Assembly (NCBI GenBank): GCA_977020255.1
Contig: CDROCS010000253.1
Span: 1,736,001 to 1,800,000 of the forward strand
Length of the DNA stretch: 64,000 bases
Origin: Obrimoposthia wandeli
Lineage: Eukaryota
Direction: 5' to 3'
Notes under the pieces: model-generated
What the model was told of the DNA's origin: nothing
The model's database searches: none
Seen by the model: only the letters and a program-made list of their open reading frames with translations
In this document: piece after piece, positions 3,228-58,435 of the stretch
How the letters are laid out: each line of letters opens with the position of its first letter
Numbering within the stretch: position 1 is the stretch's first letter
Program-made: the position numbers and the translations under genes

Positions 3228-4139
3228 ATGACGATTCAAATAATGAAGAATAAAAAAAACTCCTCCGTAGATCTTTCTGTAGGCATAGTTGGTTGTGGCT
3301 GGCTGGGTAGTGCATTAGCGCATCAGTTGAAAAAACAGGACGTAGCAGTACTCGCGACACGTAGTAATATAGACAACACCGAACAGCTGAAAAGCCAAGG
3401 CATTGAAGCTGAAGTCTTATGCTTGCCAGCTGAGCAAGCCTTGTTAAATAGCCATGCCATTTTTAAGCAGCAATGTTTAGTTATCGCTATTACGCCACAA
3501 TTTAGACAAGGTCGCGTTGATTATGCTGACAAAGTAAAACAGCTAGTTGAATCAGCCAAAGTGGGTAACTGTGTCGAGAAAATAATTTTACTGAGCAGTA
3601 GTGCGATATATAACGGTTTATCAGGGCAAGTAGTGGAAGACTGCACTCTAGATATGTCTGCTGATAAAGTTTCGGTATTAAATAATGCAGAACAAGCGGT
3701 ATTGAGTTTCAATGAAGCTAGCTGTAATGAATCAAATGATGACTTAGCTAATAAAAAAGCTTATGTACTTAGGTTATCAGGCCTTGTTGGCCCCAATCGT
3801 CACCCAGGGAAATTTTTGTTAAATGGTCGTATGCTCAAAAGCCCACAGGCAATTGTTAACTTAATTCATCAACAAGATGCCGTTGGTCTCATTCAGACAT
3901 TGCTACAAAGTGACATCCACGGCGGAATTTTTAATGGTGTTAGCTCAACACAGGTCACTAAAAAGCAATATTATCAAGCGGCAGCAAGTGCCTTAGGATT
4001 ATCAACACCTACTTTTGAAGAGAGTGACCTGACATCAGCGAGTGAACCTAAAATAGTCTCAGGTAAAAAAACTCAGGCAGCGTTAAATTATTCATTCGTT
4101 TATGATGATTTACTCAATTGGCTAGAGTTAGGAGAGTAG
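3228..4139 (+). CDS. NAD-dependent epimerase/dehydratase (YeeZ-like extended SDR)
   Basis: GIVGCGWLG Rossmann motif; LSSSAIY; LRLSGLVGP.RHP. Confidence 0.85.
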   Translation: MTIQIMKNKKNSSVDLSVGIVGCGWLGSALAHQLKKQDVAVLATRSNIDNTEQLKSQGIEAEVLCLPAEQALLNSHAIFKQQCLVIAITPQFRQGRVDYADKVKQLVESAKVGNCVEKIILLSSSAIYNGLSGQVVEDCTLDMSADKVSVLNNAEQAVLSFNEASCNESNDDLANKKAYVLRLSGLVGPNRHPGKFLLNGRMLKSPQAIVNLIHQQDAVGLIQTLLQSDIHGGIFNGVSSTQVTKKQYYQAAASALGLSTPTFEESDLTSASEPKIVSGKKTQAALNYSFVYDDLLNWLELGE

Positions 4140-4192
4140 TTCTGATACCTAAGTGATCATTTCCTTACGTTCCTATGCACATGCTTCAGGGG

Positions 4193-4272
4193 CGTCATCC
4201 CCGTGGTGTCTTAATCGGAGATCCAGTTTATAAAAAGTAATGGATCTTCGATCAGGAACTTCGAAGATGACG
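4193..4272. repeat. CGTC-type REP-like doublet
   Basis: CGTCATCCCCG...CGGAGATCCA ... TGGATCTTCG...CGAAGATGACG; same architecture at 5597, 7371, 28699. Confidence 0.85.
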
Positions 4273-4390
4273 TTTACAGCAAAACCCTGAGTTAAATATA
4301 TAATAATGTTTTCTTATATCAAAATGATTATTACACTGGATGTTAGCTCTTTTGATATACTAGCGCCGTTATTTATTAAAGAGCCAACTT

Positions 4391-4669
4391 TTGAATTTAT
4401 TTCCAACAAAATTTATAATTCGCCACCAAGCTAAACTCTTGTTTATTGCTGTATGGGCTCATGTCACTATTTTAGATCTTTGTTATGTGACTTATACGGG
4501 GCCAATATTTTTTTGGCAAGAAAACTTACAACCATACACATTATTTATTCATCTAACGGTAGCCTCCTTAACTTTAGCTTTCTATTTTTTACTTATGAAT
4601 ATCAGTACACGTTTTCGAGCAAATAAAGCCGTTAAAATACTCAACTCTACCAAGGATTCTTCATACTAA
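4391..4669 (+). CDS. Small hypothetical membrane protein, stop overlaps dusC start
   Basis: TTG start, 92 aa, two hydrophobic stretches; TAATG overlap with dusC. Confidence 0.45.
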   Translation: MNLFPTKFIIRHQAKLLFIAVWAHVTILDLCYVTYTGPIFFWQENLQPYTLFIHLTVASLTLAFYFLLMNISTRFRANKAVKILNSTKDSSY

Positions 4670-16161: not shown

Positions 16162-18993
16162 TTATTTCGACGCTAGCAAGGGTTTTAAAAATCGAGCTGT
16201 ATGTGAGGTTTTATGCTTGGCAACTTGTTCAGGAGTGCCTGTAACTAAAATTTCACCACCACCTGCGCCACCTTCAGGACCTAAGTCAATAACCCAATCG
16301 GCAGTTTTGACGACGTCTAAGTTGTGCTCAATCACTACGATAGTATTACCATGATCACGCAAGCGATGAATAACGTTCAATAATTGTTTGATATCGTGGA
16401 AATGCAAACCTGTGGTTGGCTCATCTAAAATATATAATGTTTTACCGGTATCTCTTTTTGATAACTCTTTCGATAGCTTGACGCGTTGTGCTTCACCGCC
16501 CGAGAGTGTGATTGCTGACTGTCCTAGTTTGATATAGCCCAAACCAACATCGAGTAAGGTCTGCAACTTGCGATTAATCGCGGGAATAGCTTTGAAAAAG
16601 TCAAAAGCATCTTCAATGGTCAAGTCTAATACTTGATGAATATTTTTACCTTTGTATAAAACTTCTAACGTTTCGCGGTTATAACGTTTACTTTTACAGA
16701 CATCACAAGGGACATAAACATCAGGTAAAAAGTGCATTTCTACCTTGATCATGCCGTCACCTTGACAGGCTTCACAACGTCCGCCTTTAACATTAAAGCT
16801 AAAGCGTCCGGCTTTATAACCGCGTGAACGAGACTCTTGTGTTGCAGAGAATATATCGCGCACAGCAGTAAATATTCCCGTGTAAGTTGCGGGGTTTGAG
16901 CGTGGCGTTCTACCTATCGGGCTTTGATCAATCTCGATAACTTTATCTAACAATTCTAAACCATGAATGCTTTTATAAGGAGCGGGTTCATCAACCGTCG
17001 CGCCATTAAGTTCAATGTGCGCTAATTTATATAAGGTATCGTTAATCAGTGTCGATTTTCCTGAGCCTGAAACGCCTGTTACACAGGTCATTAAACCAGT
17101 AGGAATGACTAAATCGACATTTTTTAAATTATTACCGGTGGCGCCTTTGAGTTTAACGACATTCTTTTTATCAAAGACATGACGTTTTTTAGGTATTTCA
17201 ATGCGCTCTACGCCAGACAGGTATTTACCCGTTAAAGACCCTTTACAATTGAGTATGTCATCTACGGTTCCTTGCGCGATAATTTCACCACCATGCACGC
17301 CAGCACCCGGTCCAATATCAATTACAAAATCTGCCGCACGAATAGCATCTTCATCATGTTCAACCACAATAACAGTATTACCTAAATCACGCAGGTGTAG
17401 CAAAGTGCCAAGTAAGCGTTCATTATCACGTTGGTGAAGGCCAATAGATGGCTCATCTAATACATACATGACACCAACTAAACCTGCGCCAATTTGGCTG
17501 GCAAGACGTATTCGTTGTGCTTCACCACCAGATAGGGTGTTTGCACCACGTGATAAATTGAGGTAATTAAGACCAACGTTCACTAAAAAGCCTAAACGTT
17601 CGTTTACTTCTTTTAATATTTTTTCGGCAACTTGGCCTTTTTGACCCGAGAGCGTTAAACCTTGGAAGAATTTGAGCGCATCACTAATGGAAAAATCAGC
17701 GACGACAGTGAGTGGCGTATCCTCGATAAAGACATTGCGCGCTTCTAAGCGTAATCGACTACCATTACAATCTGGACAATGTTGTGAATTAAGATATTTA
17801 CCAAGCTCTTCACGTACCGCGTTTGACTCGGTTTCTTTATAACGGCGTTGCATATTATTGATGATGCCTTCAAAGGGATGCTTACGCACCACAACATCAC
17901 CACGGTCGTTCATATATTTAAATTTAATCTCTTGTTCATCACTGCCATAAAGCACCACTTTTTGTGCTTTAGCTGATAATTTATTAAACGGTTTATCAAC
18001 TTGAAATTTATAATGCTCAGCAAGAGCTTGCAGCATTTGAAAGTAGTAAAAATTACGTTTGTCCCAACCACGCACTGCACCATCAGCTAAACTTAACTCT
18101 GCGTTGGCAATTACGCGAGTACTATCAAAATATTGTTCAATACCTAAACCATCACAGGTTTGACAAGCGCCTGCTGGATTATTAAAAGAGAATAAGCGTG
18201 GCTCTAACTCTTGCATGCTGTAGCCACAATGTGAACAAGCAAAGTTAGCCGAAAAAATTAGTTCTTCGCGGTCTGGCTCGTCCATAAAGGCAACTTTGGC
18301 GGTGCCAGAGGTTAAAGTTAAGGTCGTTTCAAAAGATTCTGATAGTCGTAATTGAATATCTTTACGCACTTTTATACGGTCAACAACAACTTCTATGGTG
18401 TGTTTTTTATGTAATTCTAGTGGTGGTGGATCGGATAAGTCACACACTTCGCCATCAATACGCGCTCGAATAAAGCCTTGGGCAGCTAAGTTATCGAGTA
18501 GCTTTACATGCTCACCTTTACGGTCTTGTACAATAGGCGCAAGCAGCATCACTTTAGTGCCTTCTTCAAGCTCTAAAACTTTATCAACCATTTGTGAAAC
18601 TGTTTGTGCTGCCAGTGCTTGACCATGCTCTGGACAACGAGGCTCACCAACTCTGGCATAAAGCAAACGCAAGTAATCGTATATCTCAGTGATGGTACCT
18701 ACGGTTGAACGCGGGTTGTGAGATGTTGACTTTTGCTCAATTGAAATCGCGGGCGATAAACCTTCAATATGATCTACATCAGGCTTTTCCATTAAGGATA
18801 AAAATTGACGGGCATAAGCGGAAAGGGATTCTACATAACGACGTTGTCCCTCAGCGTAGAGTGTATCAAAGGCAAGAGAAGATTTTCCTGAACCAGAAAG
18901 GCCGGTAATGACGACGAGTTTATCTCGAGGTATTGTTAAACTAATGTCTTTGAGGTTGTGTGTGCGAGCCCCTCTGACTTCAATATTCTTCAT
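16162..18993 (-). CDS. uvrA: Excinuclease ABC subunit A
   Basis: Two ABC cassettes ([24 protein letters not shown] twice) and Zn fingers. Confidence 0.99.
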
Positions 18994-19178
18994 GCGTTTT
19001 TAACTCAAATAGCGATAAAATAGAACCGACGATTATGCCATACAAATGACGGTATAAAAACTAGTCCAATGGATAACGGCTTGTTTTCATTGTGGGGATT
19101 TTGTTGTGCTTCTTAGCGTGGTAAACTATCGGCAATTTTTTCCTATTTCTTCATTTACTTTTAGGTTTTAGCAACGTT

Positions 19179-20543
19179 ATGAGTGTTTCAGGTTTAAACC
19201 GTATTGAGAAAAAAGCTGCCTTTTCCTTAGCCAGTGTCTTTGGCGTGCGCATGTTAGGCTTGTTCATGATATTACCCGTGTTCGCCATTTATGGTGAACA
19301 ACTGACGGGTTATAGCCCTATTTGGTTAGGATTGGCCATTGGTGCCTATGGGCTAACACAAGCTTTATTGCAAATACCTATGGGTATGCTTTCGGATAAA
19401 TATGGCAGAAAACCGGTAATTCTTGCCGGTTTAGTGGTTTTTCTTATTGGTAGTATTGTTGCGGCAATGTCCGAAACGATTTACGGTGTTGTGTTAGGTC
19501 GAGCAATTCAAGGTATGGGCGCTATTGCTAGTGCAATACTCGCTTTAGCCGCTGATTTAAGTAGAGAAGAACAACGACCTAAAGTCATGGCAACCATTGG
19601 TATGTTCATCGGTTTATCGTTTACCTTTGCGATGATTTTAGGGCCAATAGTCGCTGATGCATTTGGTTTAAGTGGCTTATTCTGGTTCACAGGACTATTG
19701 ACCATTTTTGCCATGGCGATGATTCAATTTATGGTGCCAAATTCAGTGAATAAAGCGCCTAGTGGCGATAATGTCGCCTTGCCTGAGCAAATTACTCGTT
19801 TGATTCGACATCCTCAGCTATCCCGTTTAAATTGGGGTGTTTTCATTTTACATATGGCACTTACGGCTTGTTTTATTACTTTGCCTAAGCAGTTTGTTGC
19901 CAGTGGCTTATCCCTTGAAGATCATTGGCAAATATACTTACCTGCTTTGTTAGGCTCTTTCTTTTTAATGGTACCATTTATGATTTTTGCCATTAAAAAA
20001 CAGAAAGAAAACCCCATGTTCAGTGCCGCTATTTCACTGTTAGCATTAGCTTTATTTTTGCTCTGGCTATTACCGAGTGGCTTCTGGAGCTTAGTGTTGT
20101 CAGTTGTGCTATTTTTTACTGCTTTTAACTATTTAGAAGCAACCATGCCGTCAATCTTATCGCGCATAGCACCTGCTGGCGTTAAAGGTAGTGCTATGGG
20201 GATATATTCAAGCAGTCAGTTTTTAGGGGCTTTTGTTGGTGGTATTATTGGTGGGTTTATAGCGAGTCAGTATGGCGAGCAAACTATCTTCTTAGTAATG
20301 GCCGTGGTAACTGTTATCTGGTTGGGATTAAGCCTTGGTATGCAGCCATTGAAAAAATCAAAAAGTTTTAGTTTTGCTACCAATATTACCGGTGAAGAAC
20401 AGGCCGAGAAAATGGCCGAACAGTTAATAAATATGCCGGGCGTTATTGAAGCTACACTAGTACACACCGAAGCGGTTGCTTACTTAAAAGTTGATGTTCA
20501 AACGGCTGATTTAATGGCTATTAAAGCTTTACTGCAAGGTTAG
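19179..20543 (+). CDS. yajR: MFS transporter with C-terminal YAM domain (YajR-like)
   Basis: GMLSDKYGRKPVI MFS motif A; C-terminal soluble ...AYLKVD; divergent from uvrA. Confidence 0.88.
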   Translation: MSVSGLNRIEKKAAFSLASVFGVRMLGLFMILPVFAIYGEQLTGYSPIWLGLAIGAYGLTQALLQIPMGMLSDKYGRKPVILAGLVVFLIGSIVAAMSETIYGVVLGRAIQGMGAIASAILALAADLSREEQRPKVMATIGMFIGLSFTFAMILGPIVADAFGLSGLFWFTGLLTIFAMAMIQFMVPNSVNKAPSGDNVALPEQITRLIRHPQLSRLNWGVFILHMALTACFITLPKQFVASGLSLEDHWQIYLPALLGSFFLMVPFMIFAIKKQKENPMFSAAISLLALALFLLWLLPSGFWSLVLSVVLFFTAFNYLEATMPSILSRIAPAGVKGSAMGIYSSSQFLGAFVGGIIGGFIASQYGEQTIFLVMAVVTVIWLGLSLGMQPLKKSKSFSFATNITGEEQAEKMAEQLINMPGVIEATLVHTEAVAYLKVDVQTADLMAIKALLQG

Positions 20544-51472: not shown

Positions 51473-52161
51473 TATATTGCTTTATTCGTAAGGTTTGGAG
51501 CATTCCTACCAGTAATTTTGAGGTTATACGATCACACATTTAGCCTTAAACTGATTATTGATCAAACACCCCTTTAGAATAATTACGCTCCTTTGGATTT
51601 ATTCAAATGCGAGTATTACTGAACGGCTATTTTTTTCGATATAAGTTGAGTTGGTAGATAAAGTGGGGGTGTCACTACTTGCTCCCATGTAACTAATTTA
51701 ATAAAAAATAGGTAAGTGCTGTCTGGGTGGCATGATGTGATGCATTTATCCTACGCATAGATCTCGTTTAAATGAGCTCACTTTTTATAAAAATAAAAAT
51801 AAAAAGATGCCATACATTGAAGTATCGTCTGCGTCAGGATTATTGTTGATTCAATTACTTTTATGAATAGACACCGATCTATAAGCCAAAGCAGCTGATT
51901 ACCAAAAGTTTCAAGTCATGTGGCTTAATTTTGATCCGTGGGTGACGGTTTTATCGTTTGAAGAGGATTTTTTTAGCTAAGACAGTGGTATTGTCTTTAG
52001 CCGTTGGAGTAGTTGGAGCGACTGTGCGTATCGGATAAGAAGAAACGGTATTATTCACTTTTACATTACCGGTAATGAACTCACGAGTTAATAATGTCAT
52101 TTTTTTCATAGTGTTCCCATATCTCGATGAACTTGTGTAGGGCTTTGGCATAGCGTTAAAT

Positions 52162-52192
52162 AAAAGGAGGAAGAAAGTACTTACTTCCCCCT
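52162..52192 (-). terminator. ompA terminator
   Basis: Minus strand AGGGGGAAG...CTTCCTCCT followed by T-run. Confidence 0.6.
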
Positions 52193-52205
52193 AACTAACG
52201 AGATT

Positions 52206-53264
52206 TTAGTTTTTTATCATCATTTTTTTAACGGTAGCTTCAATTTTTGCAATAACTCTACGATTTAAGTCATGATCTGCAGCTGTATTTCCCTTAGAGA
52301 TTAGTTGTGTTTCACCAAAACCTTTTGCAGATAAACGGTTTTCCTCTATATCAAACTTATTAATTAATAGGCTTTTAACCGCATCAGCACGTTTTTGTGA
52401 AAGCGTTAAGTTATATTTAGCACTACCTGCAGCTGAGCTATGCCCCTCAATAACAACACTGGTGTTTTTGTATTCCTTCATAAAATCAGCTAAACGTTGA
52501 ATATCATTTATTGTTGCTGCTTTTAACTGTGAACTATTGTTTTCAAACGCCACGTTTAAATCAACATCTACTGCTGTTTCTAAAAAAAGTGGACAACCAC
52601 TTGAGTCAACTTTTACGTTTGCTGGCGTATTGTTACAAGTATCTTGCTTATCATTAATGCCATCATTATCAGTATCAACAGCGACTACTTTTGCAACAAC
52701 AGGTATTGCTGCAACTTCTTGATATACAACTTTATTAACAACAGGTGATTTTTTAACGTCACCAAAAGCATACTTTAAACCAAATTTAAAGCCTTGATCG
52801 GTATAGCCGTAGTCGACATCACGATAAACAACCGCTTCGCTATATAAAGAGAAACGATCACTAATATCAACGTTATAACCAACACCTACATTAACAGCGT
52901 TGTAACTTTTCACGTTATTAAAACGTTTTACACCAGCGAAAGCGTAAAGACCGCTATCTTCAACCTTATAAATAGCGTCAAGGCCAAAACGTGTACCATA
53001 ATCAGTATCATTGCCATTGTTAATGTCGTAACGAGTTTTTGCTAACTCTAAGCGAGCATTCCATTGTTCATTAATAATTTTTTGTAAATCAATACCTAGC
53101 CCTCTACCTGCTTCAGTATATTGCCAGTCCATTTTATTTTCTTTAGCTGTAGCCGATTTTATGTAGTCGCCAAATACGCCTATTTCCCATGTTTTATCAA
53201 TGTCTTCTGCAGCTAATGGAGAGCTTATTAATGCAGCTAACAGAGTTATTTTAAAAGTTTTCAT
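52206..53264 (-). CDS. OmpA/OprF-family outer membrane protein
   Basis: Signal peptide, N-terminal barrel, DTDNDG..D..D.C...P....VD..GC TSP3-like linker, IEGH...YNL.LSQKRA.AV...NRRV. Confidence 0.93.
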   Translation of the reverse strand: MKTFKITLLAALISSPLAAEDIDKTWEIGVFGDYIKSATAKENKMDWQYTEAGRGLGIDLQKIINEQWNARLELAKTRYDINNGNDTDYGTRFGLDAIYKVEDSGLYAFAGVKRFNNVKSYNAVNVGVGYNVDISDRFSLYSEAVVYRDVDYGYTDQGFKFGLKYAFGDVKKSPVVNKVVYQEVAAIPVVAKVVAVDTDNDGINDKQDTCNNTPANVKVDSSGCPLFLETAVDVDLNVAFENNSSQLKAATINDIQRLADFMKEYKNTSVVIEGHSSAAGSAKYNLTLSQKRADAVKSLLINKFDIEENRLSAKGFGETQLISKGNTAADHDLNRRVIAKIEATVKKMMIKN

Positions 53265-53315
53265 GGATAAATCCTTATTGAGTTTTATGTGATTATTATT
53301 TAATTTCTGGTTCTA

Positions 53316-53342
53316 TAACGGATAATAAATTAAAAAGTCACA
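53316..53342 (-). promoter_or_regulatory. ECF-type promoter directed at the ompA-family gene
   Basis: Minus strand TGTGACTTTTTAA-TTTATTATC-CGTTA. Confidence 0.7.
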
Positions 53343-53462
53343 AATTTTTAATGATTTTTTACAATTACGACTCAAACAAGTCAAAAATCAATTTATTAGC
53401 GTAGAATGCACCCGATTGAAAATTTATATATAAAAATAAGAATAAAAATCATACAAATTTAA

Positions 53463-53489
53463 TGTGACTTTTTAACGACTCAATCGTTA
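53463..53489 (+). promoter_or_regulatory. ECF-type promoter directed at cfrX-cmpX-sigX
   Basis: TGTGACTTTTTAA-CGACTCAAT-CGTTA, identical in 18 fixed positions to the minus-strand copy. Confidence 0.7.
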
Positions 53490-53526
53490 AAGAGTTAAGC
53501 GATAAAAATTATTGCTCGAGGATAAG

Positions 53527-53799
53527 ATGAAAAACATAGAACAGAATATAGCAGCAGAACTTAAAAACGAACCTGAAGTAGTCTTTAGTACTTCAGACGA
53601 CGATTTTTTTAAACGTGCAACAATCACAGCCAATAACCAGCAAGGTACTAAAGATCTTCTAGGGTTAGGTATGGCTTCACTTTGGGTTGTTTTTATTAGT
53701 ATATTTATGAAAATTTTAAAACCAATATTTAAGAAAATGGCAGTGAAGCCGCAGCAAATAAGCATGAAGATTAATACAACCAATGATAGGGTCAAATAA
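53527..53799 (+). CDS. CfrX/CrfX-like small membrane protein (putative anti-sigma)
   Basis: DDDFFKRATITANNQQGTKDLLGL then a TM helix; resembles Pseudomonas CrfX; GAGGA RBS before ATG 53527. Confidence 0.65.
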   Translation: MKNIEQNIAAELKNEPEVVFSTSDDDFFKRATITANNQQGTKDLLGLGMASLWVVFISIFMKILKPIFKKMAVKPQQISMKINTTNDRVK

Positions 53800-54623
53800 T
53801 GGATACTGAAAACATCACAGAAAAAGCTTACTCTGGCTTTATGACTATATGGCATAAAGTGGTAACTTTTTTGCCTGACTTAATTGTCGCTACGATATTT
53901 TTACTGGTTGGTTGGTTAGTTTCATCAATGGTTAAAAGGTTTTTAAATAAATTTTTAATTAAAATTGGCTTTAATACTTTTTTAGATAAACTTGGCTTAG
54001 ATGCCTTACTGAAAAAAATGGAAGTGAACGTTACTGGTAGCCAAGTAGTTGCGAGTATTGTCTCAACATTCTTTCTCTTAATATTCTTATTAGCGGCTTT
54101 AGATATTGTTGGCTTAACGGTGCTTTCAGGGTTAATTGATACCTTAGTACTGTTTCTACCTAAATTACTCGCTTCACTCGCGGTACTACTGTCTGGTTTT
54201 TTTGTTGCTCAAATTGTTTTTAATGGCGTAAAAATAGCGGCTAAAAATACTGGTATTGATTATGGTCGCTCTGTTGCTGAAGTATGTCGCGGTATTATTA
54301 TTGTTATCACTGTTTCATTATCAATAACGCAACTTGATATTGATGTATCTCTATTGAATAACATTATGACCGTAATCATTGCTAGTGTTGGTTTAGCGGC
54401 GGCTATTTCTTTAGGTATTGGTACAAAATCAATGGCACAAGAAATTGTTGCGGGTGTTTATTTACGAGAAATGTACCAAGTAGGCGATAATATTGAAGTA
54501 AAAGATATCAAAGGCACCTTAGCCTCTATTGGTAGCGTGGCGAGTAAAGTAATGGGTGAAGGTGAGTCGATGACTACCGTACCTAATACCTTCTTATTAG
54601 CCAACAAAGTTACTAAGCAATAA
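53799..54623 (+). CDS. cmpX: CmpX-like small mechanosensitive channel protein
   Basis: Two TM_helix repeats (FLPDL, FLPKL); AISLGIGTK..AQEIVAGVYLRE.YQVGD.I. Confidence 0.82.
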   Translation: MDTENITEKAYSGFMTIWHKVVTFLPDLIVATIFLLVGWLVSSMVKRFLNKFLIKIGFNTFLDKLGLDALLKKMEVNVTGSQVVASIVSTFFLLIFLLAALDIVGLTVLSGLIDTLVLFLPKLLASLAVLLSGFFVAQIVFNGVKIAAKNTGIDYGRSVAEVCRGIIIVITVSLSITQLDIDVSLLNNIMTVIIASVGLAAAISLGIGTKSMAQEIVAGVYLREMYQVGDNIEVKDIKGTLASIGSVASKVMGEGESMTTVPNTFLLANKVTKQ

Positions 54624-54640
54624 CTAGGGTTGTTTAACGT

Positions 54641-55174
54641 TTGACTACGCTTAGTGAACGGCAGCTTGTTGCTTTAGTGCAAGAGAATCTGCCTTATGAT
54701 ACGCGTCTTTTCCAGCAATTAATTACACCATACTTACCTATTTTAAAGGGGTATTGTGCAAAGTTACTCAATAACCAATCTGATGCTGAAGATGTTGTAC
54801 AGGAAACCATTATCAAGATACTCACTCACTTGAAGGATTTTAAGTGGGCGGTGTCTTTTAAAGCGTGGCTGTTCAAAATTGCTCACAACGAATGCATTAA
54901 CAAAATAAGAGACCGTCGTTGGGATACCTTAGAACAAAATGATGAATATTTAGAAAATATAATTGCTCCTGAACATACTCATCAAGATTTAGCTACAGCG
55001 TTGTCCGCGTTAATGGTCAATTTATCATTTGAGGATCGTAATATTATGCTACTCCGCTATCGTACTGAGTTAGAGTTTCAGGAAATAGCAGATATTTGTA
55101 ATTTAAAACTTTCTGCGGTTAAAATGCGTCATAAAAGAGTAATAGAGTTCTTAAAAGGGCAGTTAAAGGAATAG
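54641..55174 (+). CDS. sigX: ECF sigma factor, SigX-like
   Basis: DAEDVVQE..IK; SFKAWLFKIAHNECI; LEFQEIADI.NLKLSAVKMR. Confidence 0.8.
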   Translation: MTTLSERQLVALVQENLPYDTRLFQQLITPYLPILKGYCAKLLNNQSDAEDVVQETIIKILTHLKDFKWAVSFKAWLFKIAHNECINKIRDRRWDTLEQNDEYLENIIAPEHTHQDLATALSALMVNLSFEDRNIMLLRYRTELEFQEIADICNLKLSAVKMRHKRVIEFLKGQLKE

Positions 55175-55473
55175 AGTTAACTAGCTAACATCTTCGGTAT
55201 TATTATTTACTACAGGTAAATTTTCATCCAACCTCAACAGCCAATATTGATATTCCACGACAGGCAAGGGCTAATAAAGGTTTTTTAGTTTAAAAATCAG
55301 TAGCTTATGCTTAATGGTAAATTGATTTATAATAATTATATCGAAGTTTTTGTGGATCAAATTAGCTCATTTATATTACATTCTGTTGCAGAATTTAATT
55401 AGATGTATTTATATACTTAACTCTATAATTAAGTCAGTATTGAAGTGTTAATACATATGTATAGGATTGAATA

Positions 55474-56040
55474 ATGAAGAAAAATATTAGTTTAGCCGTT
55501 GCTCTGTTTAGTAGTTTATTTGTTAGTGCTTGTGTGACTGTTCCTCAAGAAATACAAGTGAATAAAAATCAATTGGCCATATCTAGTGTTCGCGATATTC
55601 CAATTTCTTATTCCCAAGGCAGTCTGTTTTCATTAGCGCCTAAATATGTAAAAGAAACATCATTAAAAGCTAATCAAACTCAAGCGATATATAAGCTTTA
55701 TGCGGATGCCATTATTGCTGATCTAAATGGTCACGGTTTTAAAAATACCGATGATGCCAGTAACTCAGCTTTTCATGTTGGTTTTGGTATTGCTTTAGCG
55801 AGTGATTTATCAGATAAAACGATCAATGATAAGTTTGGCATTACGCCTGGTTTACCTAACAATGATGAGTTCAAAAAAGGTAGTTTTTTAATTTACATTG
55901 AAGATGTACTCACTGGAAAAAAAGTATGGCGTGGCGCTGTACAAGGTTTCGCTCATGAAGATAAGAGTGATAGACAAAGAGAACAACGAACAGCAGCAAT
56001 TGTTAGTCGCGTAATGAAGCAGTTTTACGCCACAAATTAG
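55474..56040 (+). CDS. DUF4136-like lipoprotein
   Basis: FVSA-C lipobox; GSFLIYIED...GKKVWRG. Confidence 0.75.
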   Translation: MKKNISLAVALFSSLFVSACVTVPQEIQVNKNQLAISSVRDIPISYSQGSLFSLAPKYVKETSLKANQTQAIYKLYADAIIADLNGHGFKNTDDASNSAFHVGFGIALASDLSDKTINDKFGITPGLPNNDEFKKGSFLIYIEDVLTGKKVWRGAVQGFAHEDKSDRQREQRTAAIVSRVMKQFYATN

Positions 56041-56123
56041 CACATGTTAGTATCAAATTGACACTGATCTAGCAGGGGTTTTCTGTTTTACTTAAGTTGA
56101 ATAGTTAATTTGAGGGATAACAT

Positions 56124-56627
56124 ATGAAACAATCTATTTTAATGGTTACATTATTTACAGCCAGTTTTTTACTTGCACCAAATGCTTTTGCAGCAACCAG
56201 TGAAGTAACCTGGACGGATTATAAAAGTTACCGTGATATTGATTCTGGTACTGACAGTCGTAAACAGTTTAGAGAGCGTATTTTCAAACAGATTGAAAAA
56301 CACTTTGCGAAACTAGCGGCAACATTACCTGGCGAACAGGTTCTTAAAATTGATGTTACTGATGTCGATTTAGCAGGTGATACTAATATTGGAGGCATTA
56401 ACCGTACACGTATAGTTAAGCATATGTATTCGCCCCGCATGAATTTTTCATATTACCTCAGTGATGCAGACGCCAAGGTGATTAAATCAGATGAAGTGGT
56501 GCTAAAAGATATGAATTTTATGTCGGGTAGCAACGTCAAGTATCGCCATGAGTCATTAGGCTATGAGAAGAAAATGCTCGACGATTGGTTTAAAGCAACC
56601 TTTGATAAATTGATTGTTAGTAAATAA
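56124..56627 (+). CDS. DUF3016-like periplasmic protein
   Basis: Signal peptide; V.W.D...YRDI; DVDLAGD; PRMNFSY; YEKKMLDDWF. Confidence 0.8.
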   Translation: MKQSILMVTLFTASFLLAPNAFAATSEVTWTDYKSYRDIDSGTDSRKQFRERIFKQIEKHFAKLAATLPGEQVLKIDVTDVDLAGDTNIGGINRTRIVKHMYSPRMNFSYYLSDADAKVIKSDEVVLKDMNFMSGSNVKYRHESLGYEKKMLDDWFKATFDKLIVSK

Positions 56628-56660
56628 ATGTTACTAGGTAAACATAATTAGATATCCTAT

Positions 56661-56686
56661 AAAAAGTCACTTCGGTGGCTTTTTTT
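56661..56686 (+). terminator. Terminator after the DUF3016 gene
   Basis: AAAAAGTCAC-TTCG-GTGGCTTTTTTT. Confidence 0.85.
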
Positions 56687-56770
56687 ATTCTTGCCAATTG
56701 TATTTTAACAAAGATAATTAAGTTATTATCTTTGTTAAAATACTTTATGTTATCGCAAGGAAAAGGCTCA

Positions 56771-58435
56771 ATGAAGCTCGCCCAACATGCTACTTTTTTT
56801 ATCCGTTCTTCTGTGATTTTTACCCTTATCTTATTTCTATTACTTAATAGTCAAAGTGCATTTAGTGCACAACCACCTAACAGTGGCGATGATGTATCTA
56901 TTAAAAAGATGCTCGACAGTAAAGAAAGATCAGATAAAAATCTAGAAAAGCCTACTTCTTCTGATGGGTATAATGTTCCTAAAGATGACTTTGAACGAGG
57001 ACAGCCTCGTAGTGCAATTGCGGGCTACTTAAGTGCTATGCGTTCAGGAGATCTAACATTAGCGACCAATTACTTAGATTATCGTAACCTTTCAGCAAAA
57101 ACGCTCAGTGTTGGTAAAGAGGAATTGGCTAGACAATTAGGCGTGGTATTGAATCGTACTCTTTGGGTTGATCTTAATAGTATTAGTTCACTACAAGAGG
57201 GACGGAAAAATGATAATTTACCTTCTTATAGAGAGTTGGTCGGGCAGGTTGATTATGAAGGTAATGACGTCGATATATTATTACAGCGTGTTCCTCGCGC
57301 GCAAGATAAAGTTAAAATATGGAAAATATCAAATGCCACAGTAGAGAAAATTCCGCGTTTATTTAAACGCTATTCATATTCTCCATTGGGGGAGCTCTTA
57401 GCTCAAAAGTTACCTGCGGTAGACTTGTTCGGTGTCATGCTTTGGCAATGGATATATTTCATCTTGATGCTGGTGTTGTATTATCTTATTGCAAAAGTAC
57501 TTACCTGGGTGGTAGCTTTTGCTATAAAACACGTTTACAAAAAAGTCTCAAATGAAGTATTAAGATTTATTAAAGAGCCTTTTGCGTTATTAATCGCAGT
57601 GATTTTTGCGCGTAATTTTCATGATGAAGCCAATGTTACTATTGCGCTTAAGGCTGTGACAGAGGGAAGTACGCTACTGATCATCGCTTGGTGTTGGGTA
57701 TCTTTCCGCTTTATTGATTTAATGAAAGCACTCTTAGCAGAGAAGTTTATCGCTCAAGATAAACCTTTAGCCGTGTATTTGCTTAGACCAGCAGGCACAG
57801 TGATAAAGCTCATCCTTTTTAGTATTGCCGCATTAAACTGGTTGGAAAACCTTGGTTTTAATGCCTCTACCTTATTAGCAGGTCTAGGTATCGGTGGTTT
57901 AGCCATTGCTTTAGCTGCACAAAAAACAGTAGAAAACATTATTGGTGCTATCACCTTATACACATCAGCCCCTATTAAAATTGGTAACTTTTGTCGGTTT
58001 GGTAACAGTTTAGGTGTGGTAGAGGAAATTGGATTACGCGCTACACGTATTCGTACGTTAGATAGAAGTGTTATTTATGTCGCTAATGCGAAATTTATTG
58101 ATATGAATATAGAGAACTATTCAGAACGTGAAAAAATTGCCTTTAAGCCTAAGATTTTCTTAGCGCCAAATACGCCTAAAGAAAATATTGATGCATTATT
58201 AGTGGCAATTAGGGCAATGCTTAGTTCAACCGATAGCCTTGCTACAGCACCGCTACGTAGCCATTTTAAAGCGTATACTATCTATGGTTTAGAGTTGGAC
58301 GTTTTTGCTTATGTTAATACGACAGATTTCGATGTGTTTTTAGATGAAATCAATCAACTCAATCTGAATATTTTGGCTTTACTCAACGAGCATGATTGTA
58401 AAGTACAAGTGATCACAGAAAGAGTTGTCGAATAA
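56771..58435 (+). CDS. MscS-family mechanosensitive channel with large periplasmic domain
   Basis: LLAGLGIGGLAIALAAQKTVEN; GVVEEIGLRATRIRTLDR; start placed after the terminator. Confidence 0.9.
   Translation: MKLAQHATFFIRSSVIFTLILFLLLNSQSAFSAQPPNSGDDVSIKKMLDSKERSDKNLEKPTSSDGYNVPKDDFERGQPRSAIAGYLSAMRSGDLTLATNYLDYRNLSAKTLSVGKEELARQLGVVLNRTLWVDLNSISSLQEGRKNDNLPSYRELVGQVDYEGNDVDILLQRVPRAQDKVKIWKISNATVEKIPRLFKRYSYSPLGELLAQKLPAVDLFGVMLWQWIYFILMLVLYYLIAKVLTWVVAFAIKHVYKKVSNEVLRFIKEPFALLIAVIFARNFHDEANVTIALKAVTEGSTLLIIAWCWVSFRFIDLMKALLAEKFIAQDKPLAVYLLRPAGTVIKLILFSIAALNWLENLGFNASTLLAGLGIGGLAIALAAQKTVENIIGAITLYTSAPIKIGNFCRFGNSLGVVEEIGLRATRIRTLDRSVIYVANAKFIDMNIENYSEREKIAFKPKIFLAPNTPKENIDALLVAIRAMLSSTDSLATAPLRSHFKAYTIYGLELDVFAYVNTTDFDVFLDEINQLNLNILALLNEHDCKVQVITERVVE

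What the first reader, a model, noticed from the sequence alone, without database searches (positions are those of the whole stretch)
53316..53489. Mirror-image ECF promoters: the same 18-position motif points at both the OmpA porin gene and the sigma factor operon
Seen: TGTGACTTTTTAA-N9-CGTTA occurs on the minus strand at 53342-53316, about 50 nt before the ompA start, and on the plus strand at 53463-53489, about 37 nt before cfrX. Spacers differ in sequence but not in length. I found no third copy by eye. Known: ECF promoters have bipartite -35/-10 motifs, often with a CGT-type -10, and ECF genes commonly autoregulate. Inference: this gives the recognition sequence (GTGACTT-N14-CGTTA) of the adjacent SigX-like factor and a positive-feedback switch that co-activates the major porin.
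Basis: partly seen in the sequence, partly recalled or inferred. Interest (0 to 1): 0.78.

Follow-up and report, generated by a model that had tools for sequence, protein, structure and literature searches.

The report
Paired SigX promoters, porin and sigma operon
Two back-to-back copies of one promoter motif sit between an OmpA/OprF-like outer-membrane protein gene and the cfrX-cmpX-sigX operon of a Colwellia bacterium. The same pair is kept in about 20 related genomes, so they are very probably promoters read by the SigX sigma factor, a clean new example of a circuit already known from Pseudomonas.

Summary
TGTGACTTTTTAA-N9-CGTTA lies at 53342-53316 (-) and 53463-53489 (+). About 4e-6 exact copies per strand are expected by chance in this window.

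SigX scores 277 bits against the NCBIfam SigX model, whose cut-off is 194. The contig is a Colwellia chromosome inside a 1.35-Gb eukaryote assembly.

- **Conservation:** all 19 related loci with enough upstream DNA carry the same divergent pair. These come from Colwellia, Cognaticolwellia, Thalassotalea, Endozoicomonas, an Alteromonas and a Pseudoalteromonas. TGTGACTT is kept in 40/40 copies, CGTT in 40/40, and the spacer is N14 in 37/40. The spacer sequence itself is free.
- **Fixed distance:** the -10 box sits a near-constant distance from each start codon.
- **Specificity:** in whole genomes the strict motif occurs essentially only at this locus, and as a pair only in sigX-bearing genomes.
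- **Pseudomonas:** 15 of 20 Pseudomonadaceae loci have TGTGAC-N16/17-CGTC just before cfrX, whose transcription is experimentally SigX-dependent.

The interpretation (SigX promoters, autoregulation, porin co-control) is well supported but has no transcript data behind it. It is not new in kind: Todor et al. 2020 already predicted SigX control of cmpX and oprF homologues and named Colwellia among the clades with SigX.

The scan noted the SigX module on this window, and another SigX module elsewhere in this assembly.

The parts
53316..53342 (-). Predicted SigX (ECF102) promoter of the ompA/oprF-like gene. The -35 box TGTGACTT is at 53342-53335 and the -10 box CGTTA at 53320-53316. The start site is inferred a few nt downstream, about 53311-53308.
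   Evidence: Exact motif. The same box pair in the same orientation occurs in 19/19 related loci: TGTGACTT 20/20, CGTT 20/20, spacer N14 20/20. The -10 box lies 48-52 nt before the ompA start in 16 of 17 relatives whose divergent gene is ompA-like.
53463..53489 (+). Predicted SigX (ECF102) autoregulatory promoter of cfrX-cmpX-sigX. The -35 box TGTGACTT is at 53463-53470 and the -10 box CGTTA at 53485-53489. The start site is inferred at about 53494-53497.
   Evidence: Exact motif. Conserved in 19/19 related loci: TGTGACTT 20/20, CGTT 20/20, N14 in 17 and N15 in 3. The -10 box lies 34-47 nt (mostly 35-37) before the cfrX start. A homologous TGTGAC-N16/17-CGTC sits before cfrX in 15/20 Pseudomonadaceae loci.
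52206..53264 (-). OmpA/OprF-like outer-membrane protein gene (352 aa): N-terminal beta-barrel plus C-terminal OmpA peptidoglycan-binding domain.
   Evidence: PF13505 and PF00691. 34-44% identity to Pseudomonadaceae OprF, mostly over the C-terminal part. It is the divergent neighbour of cfrX in 17/19 relatives.
52168..52192 (-). Terminator-like hairpin just after the ompA-like stop codon.
   Evidence: Consensus scan only.
53527..53799 (+). cfrX-like gene (90 aa): acidic N-terminal part, one conserved hydrophobic helix, basic tail. Candidate regulator or anti-sigma of SigX.
   Evidence: No Pfam or NCBIfam hit. Collinear alignment with Pseudomonas CfrX shares a ..TAN.Q.G..DL.. block. Family alignment A1. 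Predicted SigX-CfrX complex gives weak support.
53799..54623 (+). cmpX-like MscS-family mechanosensitive channel gene (274 aa). Its start overlaps the cfrX stop.
   Evidence: PF05552 and PF00924. 97% identical to Colwellia relatives and 30-35% to Pseudomonadaceae CmpX.
54641..55174 (+). sigX, an ECF sigma factor of group ECF102 (177 aa, TTG start). It begins 17 nt after cmpX, so it is co-transcribed from the cfrX promoter.
   Evidence: NF007222 SigX, 277.3 bits against a cut-off of 194; Sigma70_r2 and r4. The 17-nt gap is read. No terminator-like site lies between the promoter and sigX on the + strand apart from a weak one inside sigX.

Best explanation
The two motif copies are divergent promoters read by RNA polymerase carrying the adjacent ECF sigma factor SigX (group ECF102). 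The recognition sequence is TGTGACTT (-35), 14 nt of any sequence, then CGTTA (-10). That is the same as TGTGAC-N16-CGTT, the usual ECF geometry. The plus-strand copy drives cfrX-cmpX-sigX as one operon, so SigX raises its own synthesis together with a mechanosensitive channel and a small membrane protein, CfrX, which probably restrains it. The minus-strand copy drives the OmpA/OprF-like outer-membrane protein. Activating SigX would therefore raise porin, channel, sigma factor and its likely brake together. In these genomes the strict motif is found essentially only at this locus, so the core SigX circuit looks like a self-contained envelope module. Shown here: the motif, its conservation, its uniqueness, the gene identities and the operon layout. 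Inferred: the start sites, SigX dependence, positive feedback and the role of CfrX.
For: The two copies are exact and chance is negligible. SigX is over the NCBIfam equivalog cut-off, with CmpX-like and CfrX-like neighbours. In 20/20 loci from six genera both copies are present: TGTGACTT 40/40, CGTT 40/40, N14 37/40. The spacer sequence is free, and the two copies lie 6 to 227 nt apart, so they are independent units and not one palindromic site. The -10-to-start-codon distance is conserved. Strict-pattern searches of whole genomes found only the two local sites in G001, G003 and G004, and 2 of 3 in G002. In a sample of 101 genomes of the same order, SigX is in 2, and both have the pair; the other 99 have 8 single hits in 7 genomes, against 20 control hits across the whole sample. 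15/20 Pseudomonadaceae loci carry TGTGAC-N16/17-CGTC 20-30 nt before cfrX. cfrX-cmpX transcription is SigX-dependent in P. aeruginosa, and a proximal start site giving a 13-nt 5'UTR is reported there (PMC7641640). Todor et al. 2020 predict that SigX regulates cmpX and oprF homologues, and they list Colwellia among the clades that have SigX (PMC7776599). In Pseudoalteromonas luteoviolacea three copies flank the sigX cluster, each correctly oriented before a gene. Sigma-70-like matches in the region are at background level.
Against: There are no transcript 5' ends and no genetic or biochemical test of SigX dependence for any of these organisms. In the 20 Pseudomonadaceae loci I found no TGTGAC-N16/17-CGTC between sigX and oprF, so the experimentally SigX-dependent oprF promoter there may look different. 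One sigX paralogue, L044 in Colwellia sp. C2M11, has neither the neighbours nor the motif. The -35 box resembles RpoE/AlgU-type GAACTT, so recognition by another ECF sigma is not formally excluded. The published P. aeruginosa SigX logo could not be read as text in the papers held, and one paper says the consensus is 'not precisely defined'.
Confidence: 0.85

Rival explanations
1. The motifs are ECF-type promoters, but they are read by a different sigma factor of the cell, for example an RpoE/AlgU-like envelope-stress sigma, and only happen to flank sigX.
For: The -35 box GTGACTT resembles the RpoE/AlgU -35 GGAACTT (own knowledge; AlgU consensus GAACTT-N16/17-TCTNN is quoted in PMC7641640). In Pseudomonas, AlgU and SigX both act on this gene cluster.
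Against: The -10 box CGTTA is not of the RpoE/AlgU type. An RpoE-like regulon would give many sites per genome, yet the strict motif occurs only at the sigX locus. The pair was found only in genomes that have sigX. It moves with sigX through gene rearrangements in Pseudomonas, Pseudoalteromonas and Colwellia.
Confidence: 0.06
2. The motifs are operator sites of a DNA-binding transcription factor that co-regulates the divergent genes, not promoter elements.
For: Two inverted copies in one intergenic region is a common layout for regulator binding sites. TGTGA is also a CRP half-site (own knowledge).
Against: Each copy is bipartite with a free spacer of fixed length. It has a fixed orientation towards, and a fixed distance from, the gene it precedes. 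The distance between the two copies ranges from 6 to 227 nt. No TCACA half-site follows at the CRP spacing. No regulator gene other than sigX is conserved at the locus.
Confidence: 0.05
3. The repeat is a chance match or a recent local inverted duplication with no function.
For: The region is AT-rich, and the extra shared bases TTTAA after the -35 box are not conserved in relatives.
Against: Expected chance frequency is about 4e-6 per strand per window. The boxes are invariant across 20 genomes in which the surrounding intergenic DNA has diverged freely.
Confidence: 0.01

Closest known systems
Pseudomonas aeruginosa SigX with cmaX-cfrX-cmpX-sigX-oprF (ECF102)
   Same: The same sigma family (NCBIfam SigX equivalog), the same partners (CfrX-like, MscS-like CmpX, OprF/OmpA-like protein), SigX-dependent cfrX-cmpX transcription, and a homologous TGTGAC-N16/17-CGTC element just before cfrX.
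   Different: Here the porin gene is divergent from cfrX instead of downstream of sigX, and there is no cmaX. sigX has no room for its own promoter (17-nt gap, against roughly 100-190 nt in Pseudomonadaceae). The -10 box is CGTTA, not CGTC(T/A)A. The porin gene carries a clean second copy, which I did not find before Pseudomonadaceae oprF. SigX identity is only about 37%.
Computational SigX regulon prediction of Todor et al. 2020 (PMC7776599)
   Same: It predicts that SigX regulates the neighbouring cmpX and oprF homologues. It names Colwellia, Glaciecola and Paraglaciecola as the other gammaproteobacterial clades with SigX. It finds that outside Pseudomonas the predicted regulon is limited to the neighbours.
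   Different: I could not read their motif or per-genome site lists because no supplement is held. So I cannot say whether this exact divergent pair is listed there.
Bacillus subtilis SigW/SigX/SigM-type ECF promoters
   Same: A bipartite -35 ending in AAC/GAC, a 16-17 nt spacer and a CGT-type -10, for example SigW TGAAAC-N16-CGTA (own knowledge). SigW is the closest studied homologue of Pseudomonas SigX (PMC3875570).
   Different: Here the -35 box is TGTGAC followed by TT, and the partner proteins differ (no RsiW-type anti-sigma).
RpoE/AlgU autoregulated envelope-stress operons
   Same: An ECF sigma transcribes its own operon together with its regulator and is linked to the state of outer-membrane proteins.
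   Different: RpoE lowers OMP synthesis indirectly through small RNAs and has a large regulon. Here the sigma appears to activate one OmpA-like gene directly, and the strict motif is confined to one locus.

Membership tests
ECF sigma-dependent promoter | Bipartite -35/-10 boxes separated by a spacer of fixed length and free sequence, with a CGT-type -10 | tested here: met
   TGTGACTT 40/40, CGTT 40/40, N14 37/40 and N15 3/40, with low information content in the spacer.
ECF sigma-dependent promoter | Oriented towards, and at a promoter-like distance from, the downstream gene | tested here: met
   The -10 end lies 34-47 nt (mostly 35-37) before cfrX, and 48-52 nt before ompA in 16/17 relatives.
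ECF sigma-dependent promoter | Transcription starts a few nt downstream of the -10 box | not testable with these tools
   No transcript data for this organism. Only an indirect match to the cfrX-proximal start site reported in P. aeruginosa (PMC7641640).
ECF sigma-dependent promoter | Activity depends on the cognate sigma factor | not testable with these tools
   Co-occurrence only: the pair is present in 2/2 sigX-bearing and 0/99 sigX-lacking genomes of the order sample.
SigX / ECF102 sigma factor | Sequence over the curated SigX equivalog threshold, with only sigma-70 regions 2 and 4 | tested here: met
   NF007222 scores 277.3 bits against a cut-off of 194; PF04542 and PF04545/PF08281.
SigX / ECF102 sigma factor | Conserved neighbourhood of a mechanosensitive channel (CmpX), CfrX and an OprF-like porin (ECF102 subgroup 1, PMC7826278) | tested here: met
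   All three are present, but the porin is divergent instead of downstream.
Autoregulated ECF operon | The sigma gene lies in the transcription unit driven by its own promoter motif | tested here: met
   The cfrX stop overlaps the cmpX start, and there are 17 nt between cmpX and sigX. Co-transcription itself is inferred.
P. aeruginosa-type SigX-dependent oprF promoter | The same SigX motif in front of oprF in Pseudomonadaceae | tested here: not met
   No TGTGAC-N16/17-CGTC in the sigX-oprF intergenic region of the fetched Pseudomonadaceae loci; an element GAAACTT..TCTCT overlaps the sigX stop instead.
Anti-sigma factor (CfrX-like protein) | A recognisable anti-sigma domain, or binding to the sigma factor | tested here: inconclusive
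   No Pfam or NCBIfam family. Predicted SigX-CfrX complex: ipSAE 0.57, best control 0.01, verdict 'weak support'. The runs agree in at least 92% of contacts and partner pLDDT is 61-62. The mark was reached by 51/78 solved complexes and 2/108 mismatched pairs, but a score of 0.60 or under was seen in only 5 of those 78 and in all 4 mismatches that passed.

The most novel reading that the evidence does not exclude
In Colwellia-type bacteria SigX runs a closed, single-locus circuit: two promoters, one for an OmpA/OprF-like protein and one for CfrX, the CmpX channel and SigX itself, with no other strict site in the genome. On this reading the ancestral job of ECF102 is to couple membrane-tension sensing to porin supply. 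The hundreds of SigX-affected genes in P. aeruginosa would then be later additions or indirect effects, and the clean TGTGACTT-N14-CGTTA footprint would supply the SigX consensus that Pseudomonas workers still call 'not precisely defined'. CfrX, a one-helix membrane protein here, would be the missing anti-sigma.
Probability: 0.4. Interest if true: 0.5.

Novelty: new member of a known kind. Interest (0 to 1): 0.35.

Why it matters
SigX is a major envelope, biofilm and virulence regulator in Pseudomonas aeruginosa. Its promoter consensus and its control mechanism are still unsettled. The Colwellia-group loci give an unusually clean natural experiment, with two invariant boxes in 40 promoter copies across six genera and almost no other copy in each genome. 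This fixes a testable recognition sequence. It points to the matching cfrX-proximal element in Pseudomonadaceae. It also suggests that the core regulon is only the porin gene and the sigma operon. For this window itself, the result is a confident annotation of two promoters and one regulatory loop, not a new kind of system.

Tried and rejected
- **Other sites on the contig:** the four further GTGACTT-N14-CGTT hits on C253 lack the leading T. One lies at the end of a coding region, one inside a gene on the same strand, one antisense inside a gene, and one (L018) has no ORF of 80 aa or more downstream. Rejected as promoters.
- **A conserved N15 site:** C253:454392, also present in two Colwellia relatives, lies antisense inside a conserved 592-aa ORF. 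Its conservation comes from the coding sequence.
- **Loosened pattern:** TGTGAC-N16/17-CGTTA is not enriched over the reversed-pattern control in three relatives. TGTGAC-N16/17-CGTC gives 3-6 hits in each of five Pseudomonadaceae genomes, below control. No wider regulon could be defined this way.
- **Sigma-70 scan:** 24 matches against 20 +/- 4 in shuffles, which is uninformative.
- **Rfam:** no match at E <= 1 over 52000-56800.
- **5'UTR hairpin:** a small AGC..TGCT hairpin suspected in the cfrX 5'UTR got no RNAalifold support.
- **Published logo:** the P. aeruginosa SigX logo could not be obtained as text. Blanka 2014, Bouffartigues 2012 and Brinkman 1999 are not held. No supplements are held for Todor 2020 or Casas-Pastor 2021. 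No held paper pairs 'SigX' with 'TGTGAC' in a relevant way.
- **Complex prediction:** SigX-CfrX gave only 'weak support', which is not used as evidence for binding.
- **Distant ECFs:** the 25-31%-identical ECF sigmas in Bacteroidota and other phyla (L053-L070) show no such motif and are not taken as SigX orthologues.

Full report
**1. The observation**

The region 53100-53700 shows the motif on both strands. The minus-strand copy at 53342-53316 reads TGTGACTTTTTAA-TTTATTATC-CGTTA. The plus-strand copy at 53463-53489 reads TGTGACTTTTTAA-CGACTCAAT-CGTTA.

A pattern search allowing up to 3 mismatches finds only these two in the window, both exact; shuffles give a mean of 0.17. From base composition, an exact 18-position match is expected about 4e-6 times per strand per window. 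The minus-strand copy ends 51 nt before the ATG at 53264, and the plus-strand copy ends 37 nt before the ATG at 53527.

**2. The genes and the organism**

| Coordinates | Strand | Gene | Evidence |
|---|---|---|---|
| 52206-53264 | - | OmpA/OprF-like protein, 352 aa | PF13505 beta-barrel and PF00691 OmpA domain |
| 53527-53799 | + | cfrX-like, 90 aa | no family match |
| 53799-54623 | + | cmpX-like MscS channel | PF05552, PF00924 |
| 54641-55174 | + | sigX | NF007222, 277.3 bits, cut-off 194 |

- The 90-aa protein aligns collinearly with Pseudomonadaceae CfrX and shares a ..TAN.Q.G..DL.. block.
- cfrX and cmpX overlap by one base, and sigX starts 17 nt after cmpX. The three genes therefore form one operon with no room for a separate sigX promoter outside coding sequence.
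- A terminator-like hairpin follows ompA at 52192-52168.
- The window lies on contig C253 of a 1.35-Gb, 6912-contig assembly. That is a bacterial chromosome-sized contig inside a eukaryote assembly.
- SigX is 93-94% identical to Colwellia sp. 75C3 and C. demingiae, so the bacterium is a Colwellia.

**3. Conservation**

A scan of one genome per species with SigX returned 22 orthologous loci. They come from Colwellia, Cognaticolwellia, Thalassotalea, Endozoicomonas, an Alteromonas and Pseudoalteromonas luteoviolacea. Nineteen of them have enough upstream DNA to examine, and all 19 carry both copies in the same divergent arrangement.

Over the 20 genomes (19 relatives plus the window), the 40 copies show:

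- TGTGACTT in 40/40.
- CGTT in 40/40, with the fifth base A in 35/40.
- A 14-nt spacer in 37/40 and 15 nt in 3/40.
- Almost no information in the spacer columns.

The TTTAA that the two copies share in this window is not conserved in relatives. The recognition sequence is therefore TGTGACTT-N14-CGTTA, often extended to TTGTGACTTT and CGTTATAG on the porin side.

The -10 box lies 34-47 nt (mostly 35-37) before cfrX. It lies 48-52 nt before ompA in 16 of the 17 relatives whose divergent gene is ompA-like. The gap between the two -35 boxes ranges from 6 to 227 nt. The copies are thus two independent units, not halves of one site.

The divergent gene is ompA-like in 17/19 relatives. In P. luteoviolacea it is mgtE, and a third copy right after sigX precedes an AstE/AspA-like gene and a glucosaminidase gene.

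**4. Specificity**

- The strict pattern occurs only at the sigX locus in three related whole genomes, and at 2 of 3 places in a fourth.
- On contig C253 it occurs only at the two sites. The whole assembly has 24 hits against 33 for the reversed control.
- In an even sample of 101 genomes of the same order, SigX is found in two, and both have the pair. The other 99 have 8 single hits in 7 genomes. The reversed control gave 20 hits across the whole sample.
- Looser patterns are not enriched. The other partial hits on C253 lie in or antisense to genes, or have no ORF of 80 aa or more downstream.

No wider regulon can be seen. The strict circuit is local.

**5. Link to Pseudomonas**

SigX was found in 37 of 41 sampled genomes of the family that gave the best SigX score, evidently Pseudomonadaceae from the cmaX-cfrX-cmpX-sigX-oprF gene order. 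In 15 of 20 fetched loci, TGTGAC-N16/17-CGTC(T/A)A sits at the end of cmaX, 20-30 nt before the cfrX start.

Bouffartigues et al. 2020 (PMC7641640) show that cfrX-cmpX transcription is SigX-dependent. They cite a proximal start site giving a 13-nt 5'UTR, and they say the SigX consensus 'remains not precisely defined'. The element found here is the obvious candidate for that proximal promoter.

Between sigX and oprF I found no such element in the Pseudomonadaceae loci. A GAAACTT..TCTCT element overlaps the sigX stop instead.

Todor et al. 2020 (PMC7776599) already predict that SigX regulates cmpX and oprF homologues, and they name Colwellia among the few other clades with SigX. Casas-Pastor et al. 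2021 (PMC7826278) place SigX in ECF102, with CmpX, CfrX and OprF conserved in subgroup 1.

**6. Mechanism**

The geometry TGTGAC-N16-CGTT matches ECF promoters of the SigW type, TGAAAC-N16-CGTA (own knowledge).

The best reading is that SigX holoenzyme starts transcription a few nt after each CGTTA. One promoter feeds the OmpA/OprF-like protein. The other feeds CfrX, CmpX and SigX itself, giving positive feedback.

A feedback loop of this kind needs a brake. CfrX is the literature's candidate. Here it has a conserved hydrophobic helix (alignment A1).

A predicted SigX-CfrX complex scored ipSAE 0.57 against a best control of 0.01, with the verdict 'weak support'. The runs agree in at least 92% of contacts, and partner pLDDT is 61-62. 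The mark was reached by 51 of 78 solved complexes and 2 of 108 mismatched pairs. However, scores of 0.60 or under were seen in only 5 of those 78 and in all 4 mismatches that passed. I treat this as a hint only.

**7. Rivals**

- **Another ECF sigma (RpoE/AlgU-like):** unlikely, because the -10 box differs, the motif is unique to the sigX locus, and it occurs as a pair only where sigX is present.
- **A transcription-factor operator:** does not fit the fixed orientation, the fixed spacer and the variable distance between copies.
- **Chance or recent duplication:** excluded by the conservation.

**8. Verdict**

This is a new, clean member of a known regulatory kind. Its main value is a sharp SigX/ECF102 consensus and a hint that the core regulon is a single locus.

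The scan had already noted the SigX module on this window (s1-208546) and a second, rearranged SigX module elsewhere in the assembly (s1-198778). I found a second SigX gene over the cut-off on contig C2815, with two tandem strict motif copies about 1.4 kb upstream. Whether C2815 is the piece described in s1-198778 was not checked.

Noticed in passing
whole assembly G000; window = C253:1736001-1800000: The assembly is 1.35 Gb in 6912 contigs, so it is a eukaryote. C253 is a bacterial (Colwellia) chromosome-sized contig, with motif hits out to 4.48 Mb. The bacterium is a co-assembled associate or contaminant.
   Followed up: partly
G000:C2815:17534-17560 (-), 17626-17652 (-), sigX at 18989-19519 (+): A second SigX gene over the NCBIfam cut-off (216.5 bits) lies on another contig. 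Two tandem strict copies of TGTGACTT-N14-CGTTA sit on the minus strand about 1.4 kb upstream of it. No plus-strand strict copy was found there.
   Followed up: partly
L052 (Pseudoalteromonas luteoviolacea) 2826 (-), 2832 (+), 4541 (+): There are three motif copies here. The divergent one precedes mgtE (a Mg2+ transporter, recalling cmaX in Pseudomonas). A third, right after sigX, precedes an AstE/AspA-like gene and a glucosaminidase gene. The local SigX targets therefore differ between lineages.
   Followed up: partly
L074 = G005:C8:178503-181529, motif at about 1502 (+): In P. luteoviolacea a further strict copy lies in an intergenic gap, about 85 nt before a 471-aa ORF far from sigX. It is a possible extra regulon member in that species.
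   Followed up: no
L044 (Colwellia sp. C2M11, second sigX copy at 4001-4531): This is an orphan sigX paralogue (73% identical) without cfrX, cmpX or ompA neighbours and without the motif. The same genome's other copy (L037) has the pair but faces a 185-aa protein with no Pfam family instead of ompA.
   Followed up: partly
window 53799-54623 and relatives: CmpX is more conserved than SigX: 97% against 93% identity to the nearest Colwellia, and still 77-82% in Thalassotalea where SigX is 65%. CfrX is the least conserved, at 78%.
   Followed up: no
window 53497-53517 (cfrX 5'UTR): A conserved AGC..(7-12 nt)..TGCT element lies directly before the Shine-Dalgarno sequence in most relatives. RNAalifold predicts no consensus structure, so it remains unexplained.
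   Followed up: partly
window 55175-55473: A 300-nt AT-rich gap follows sigX with no terminator-like site. The next terminator-like hairpin on the plus strand comes only after the DUF4136 and DUF3016 genes, at 56661-56684. These two genes follow sigX in only some relatives.
   Followed up: partly
many eukaryotic contigs of G000, e.g. C109:14189, C1000:8010: One 28-nt string, TGTGACTTTAATGTCAAACTTAACGTTA, recurs in dozens of contigs. It is a host repeat family that happens to match the N15 pattern and is unrelated to the finding.
   Followed up: no
G000:C370:1579861-1579888 (-): A near-copy of the intragenic N15 site of C253:454392 lies on another large contig. This suggests a second related gammaproteobacterium in the assembly.
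   Followed up: no
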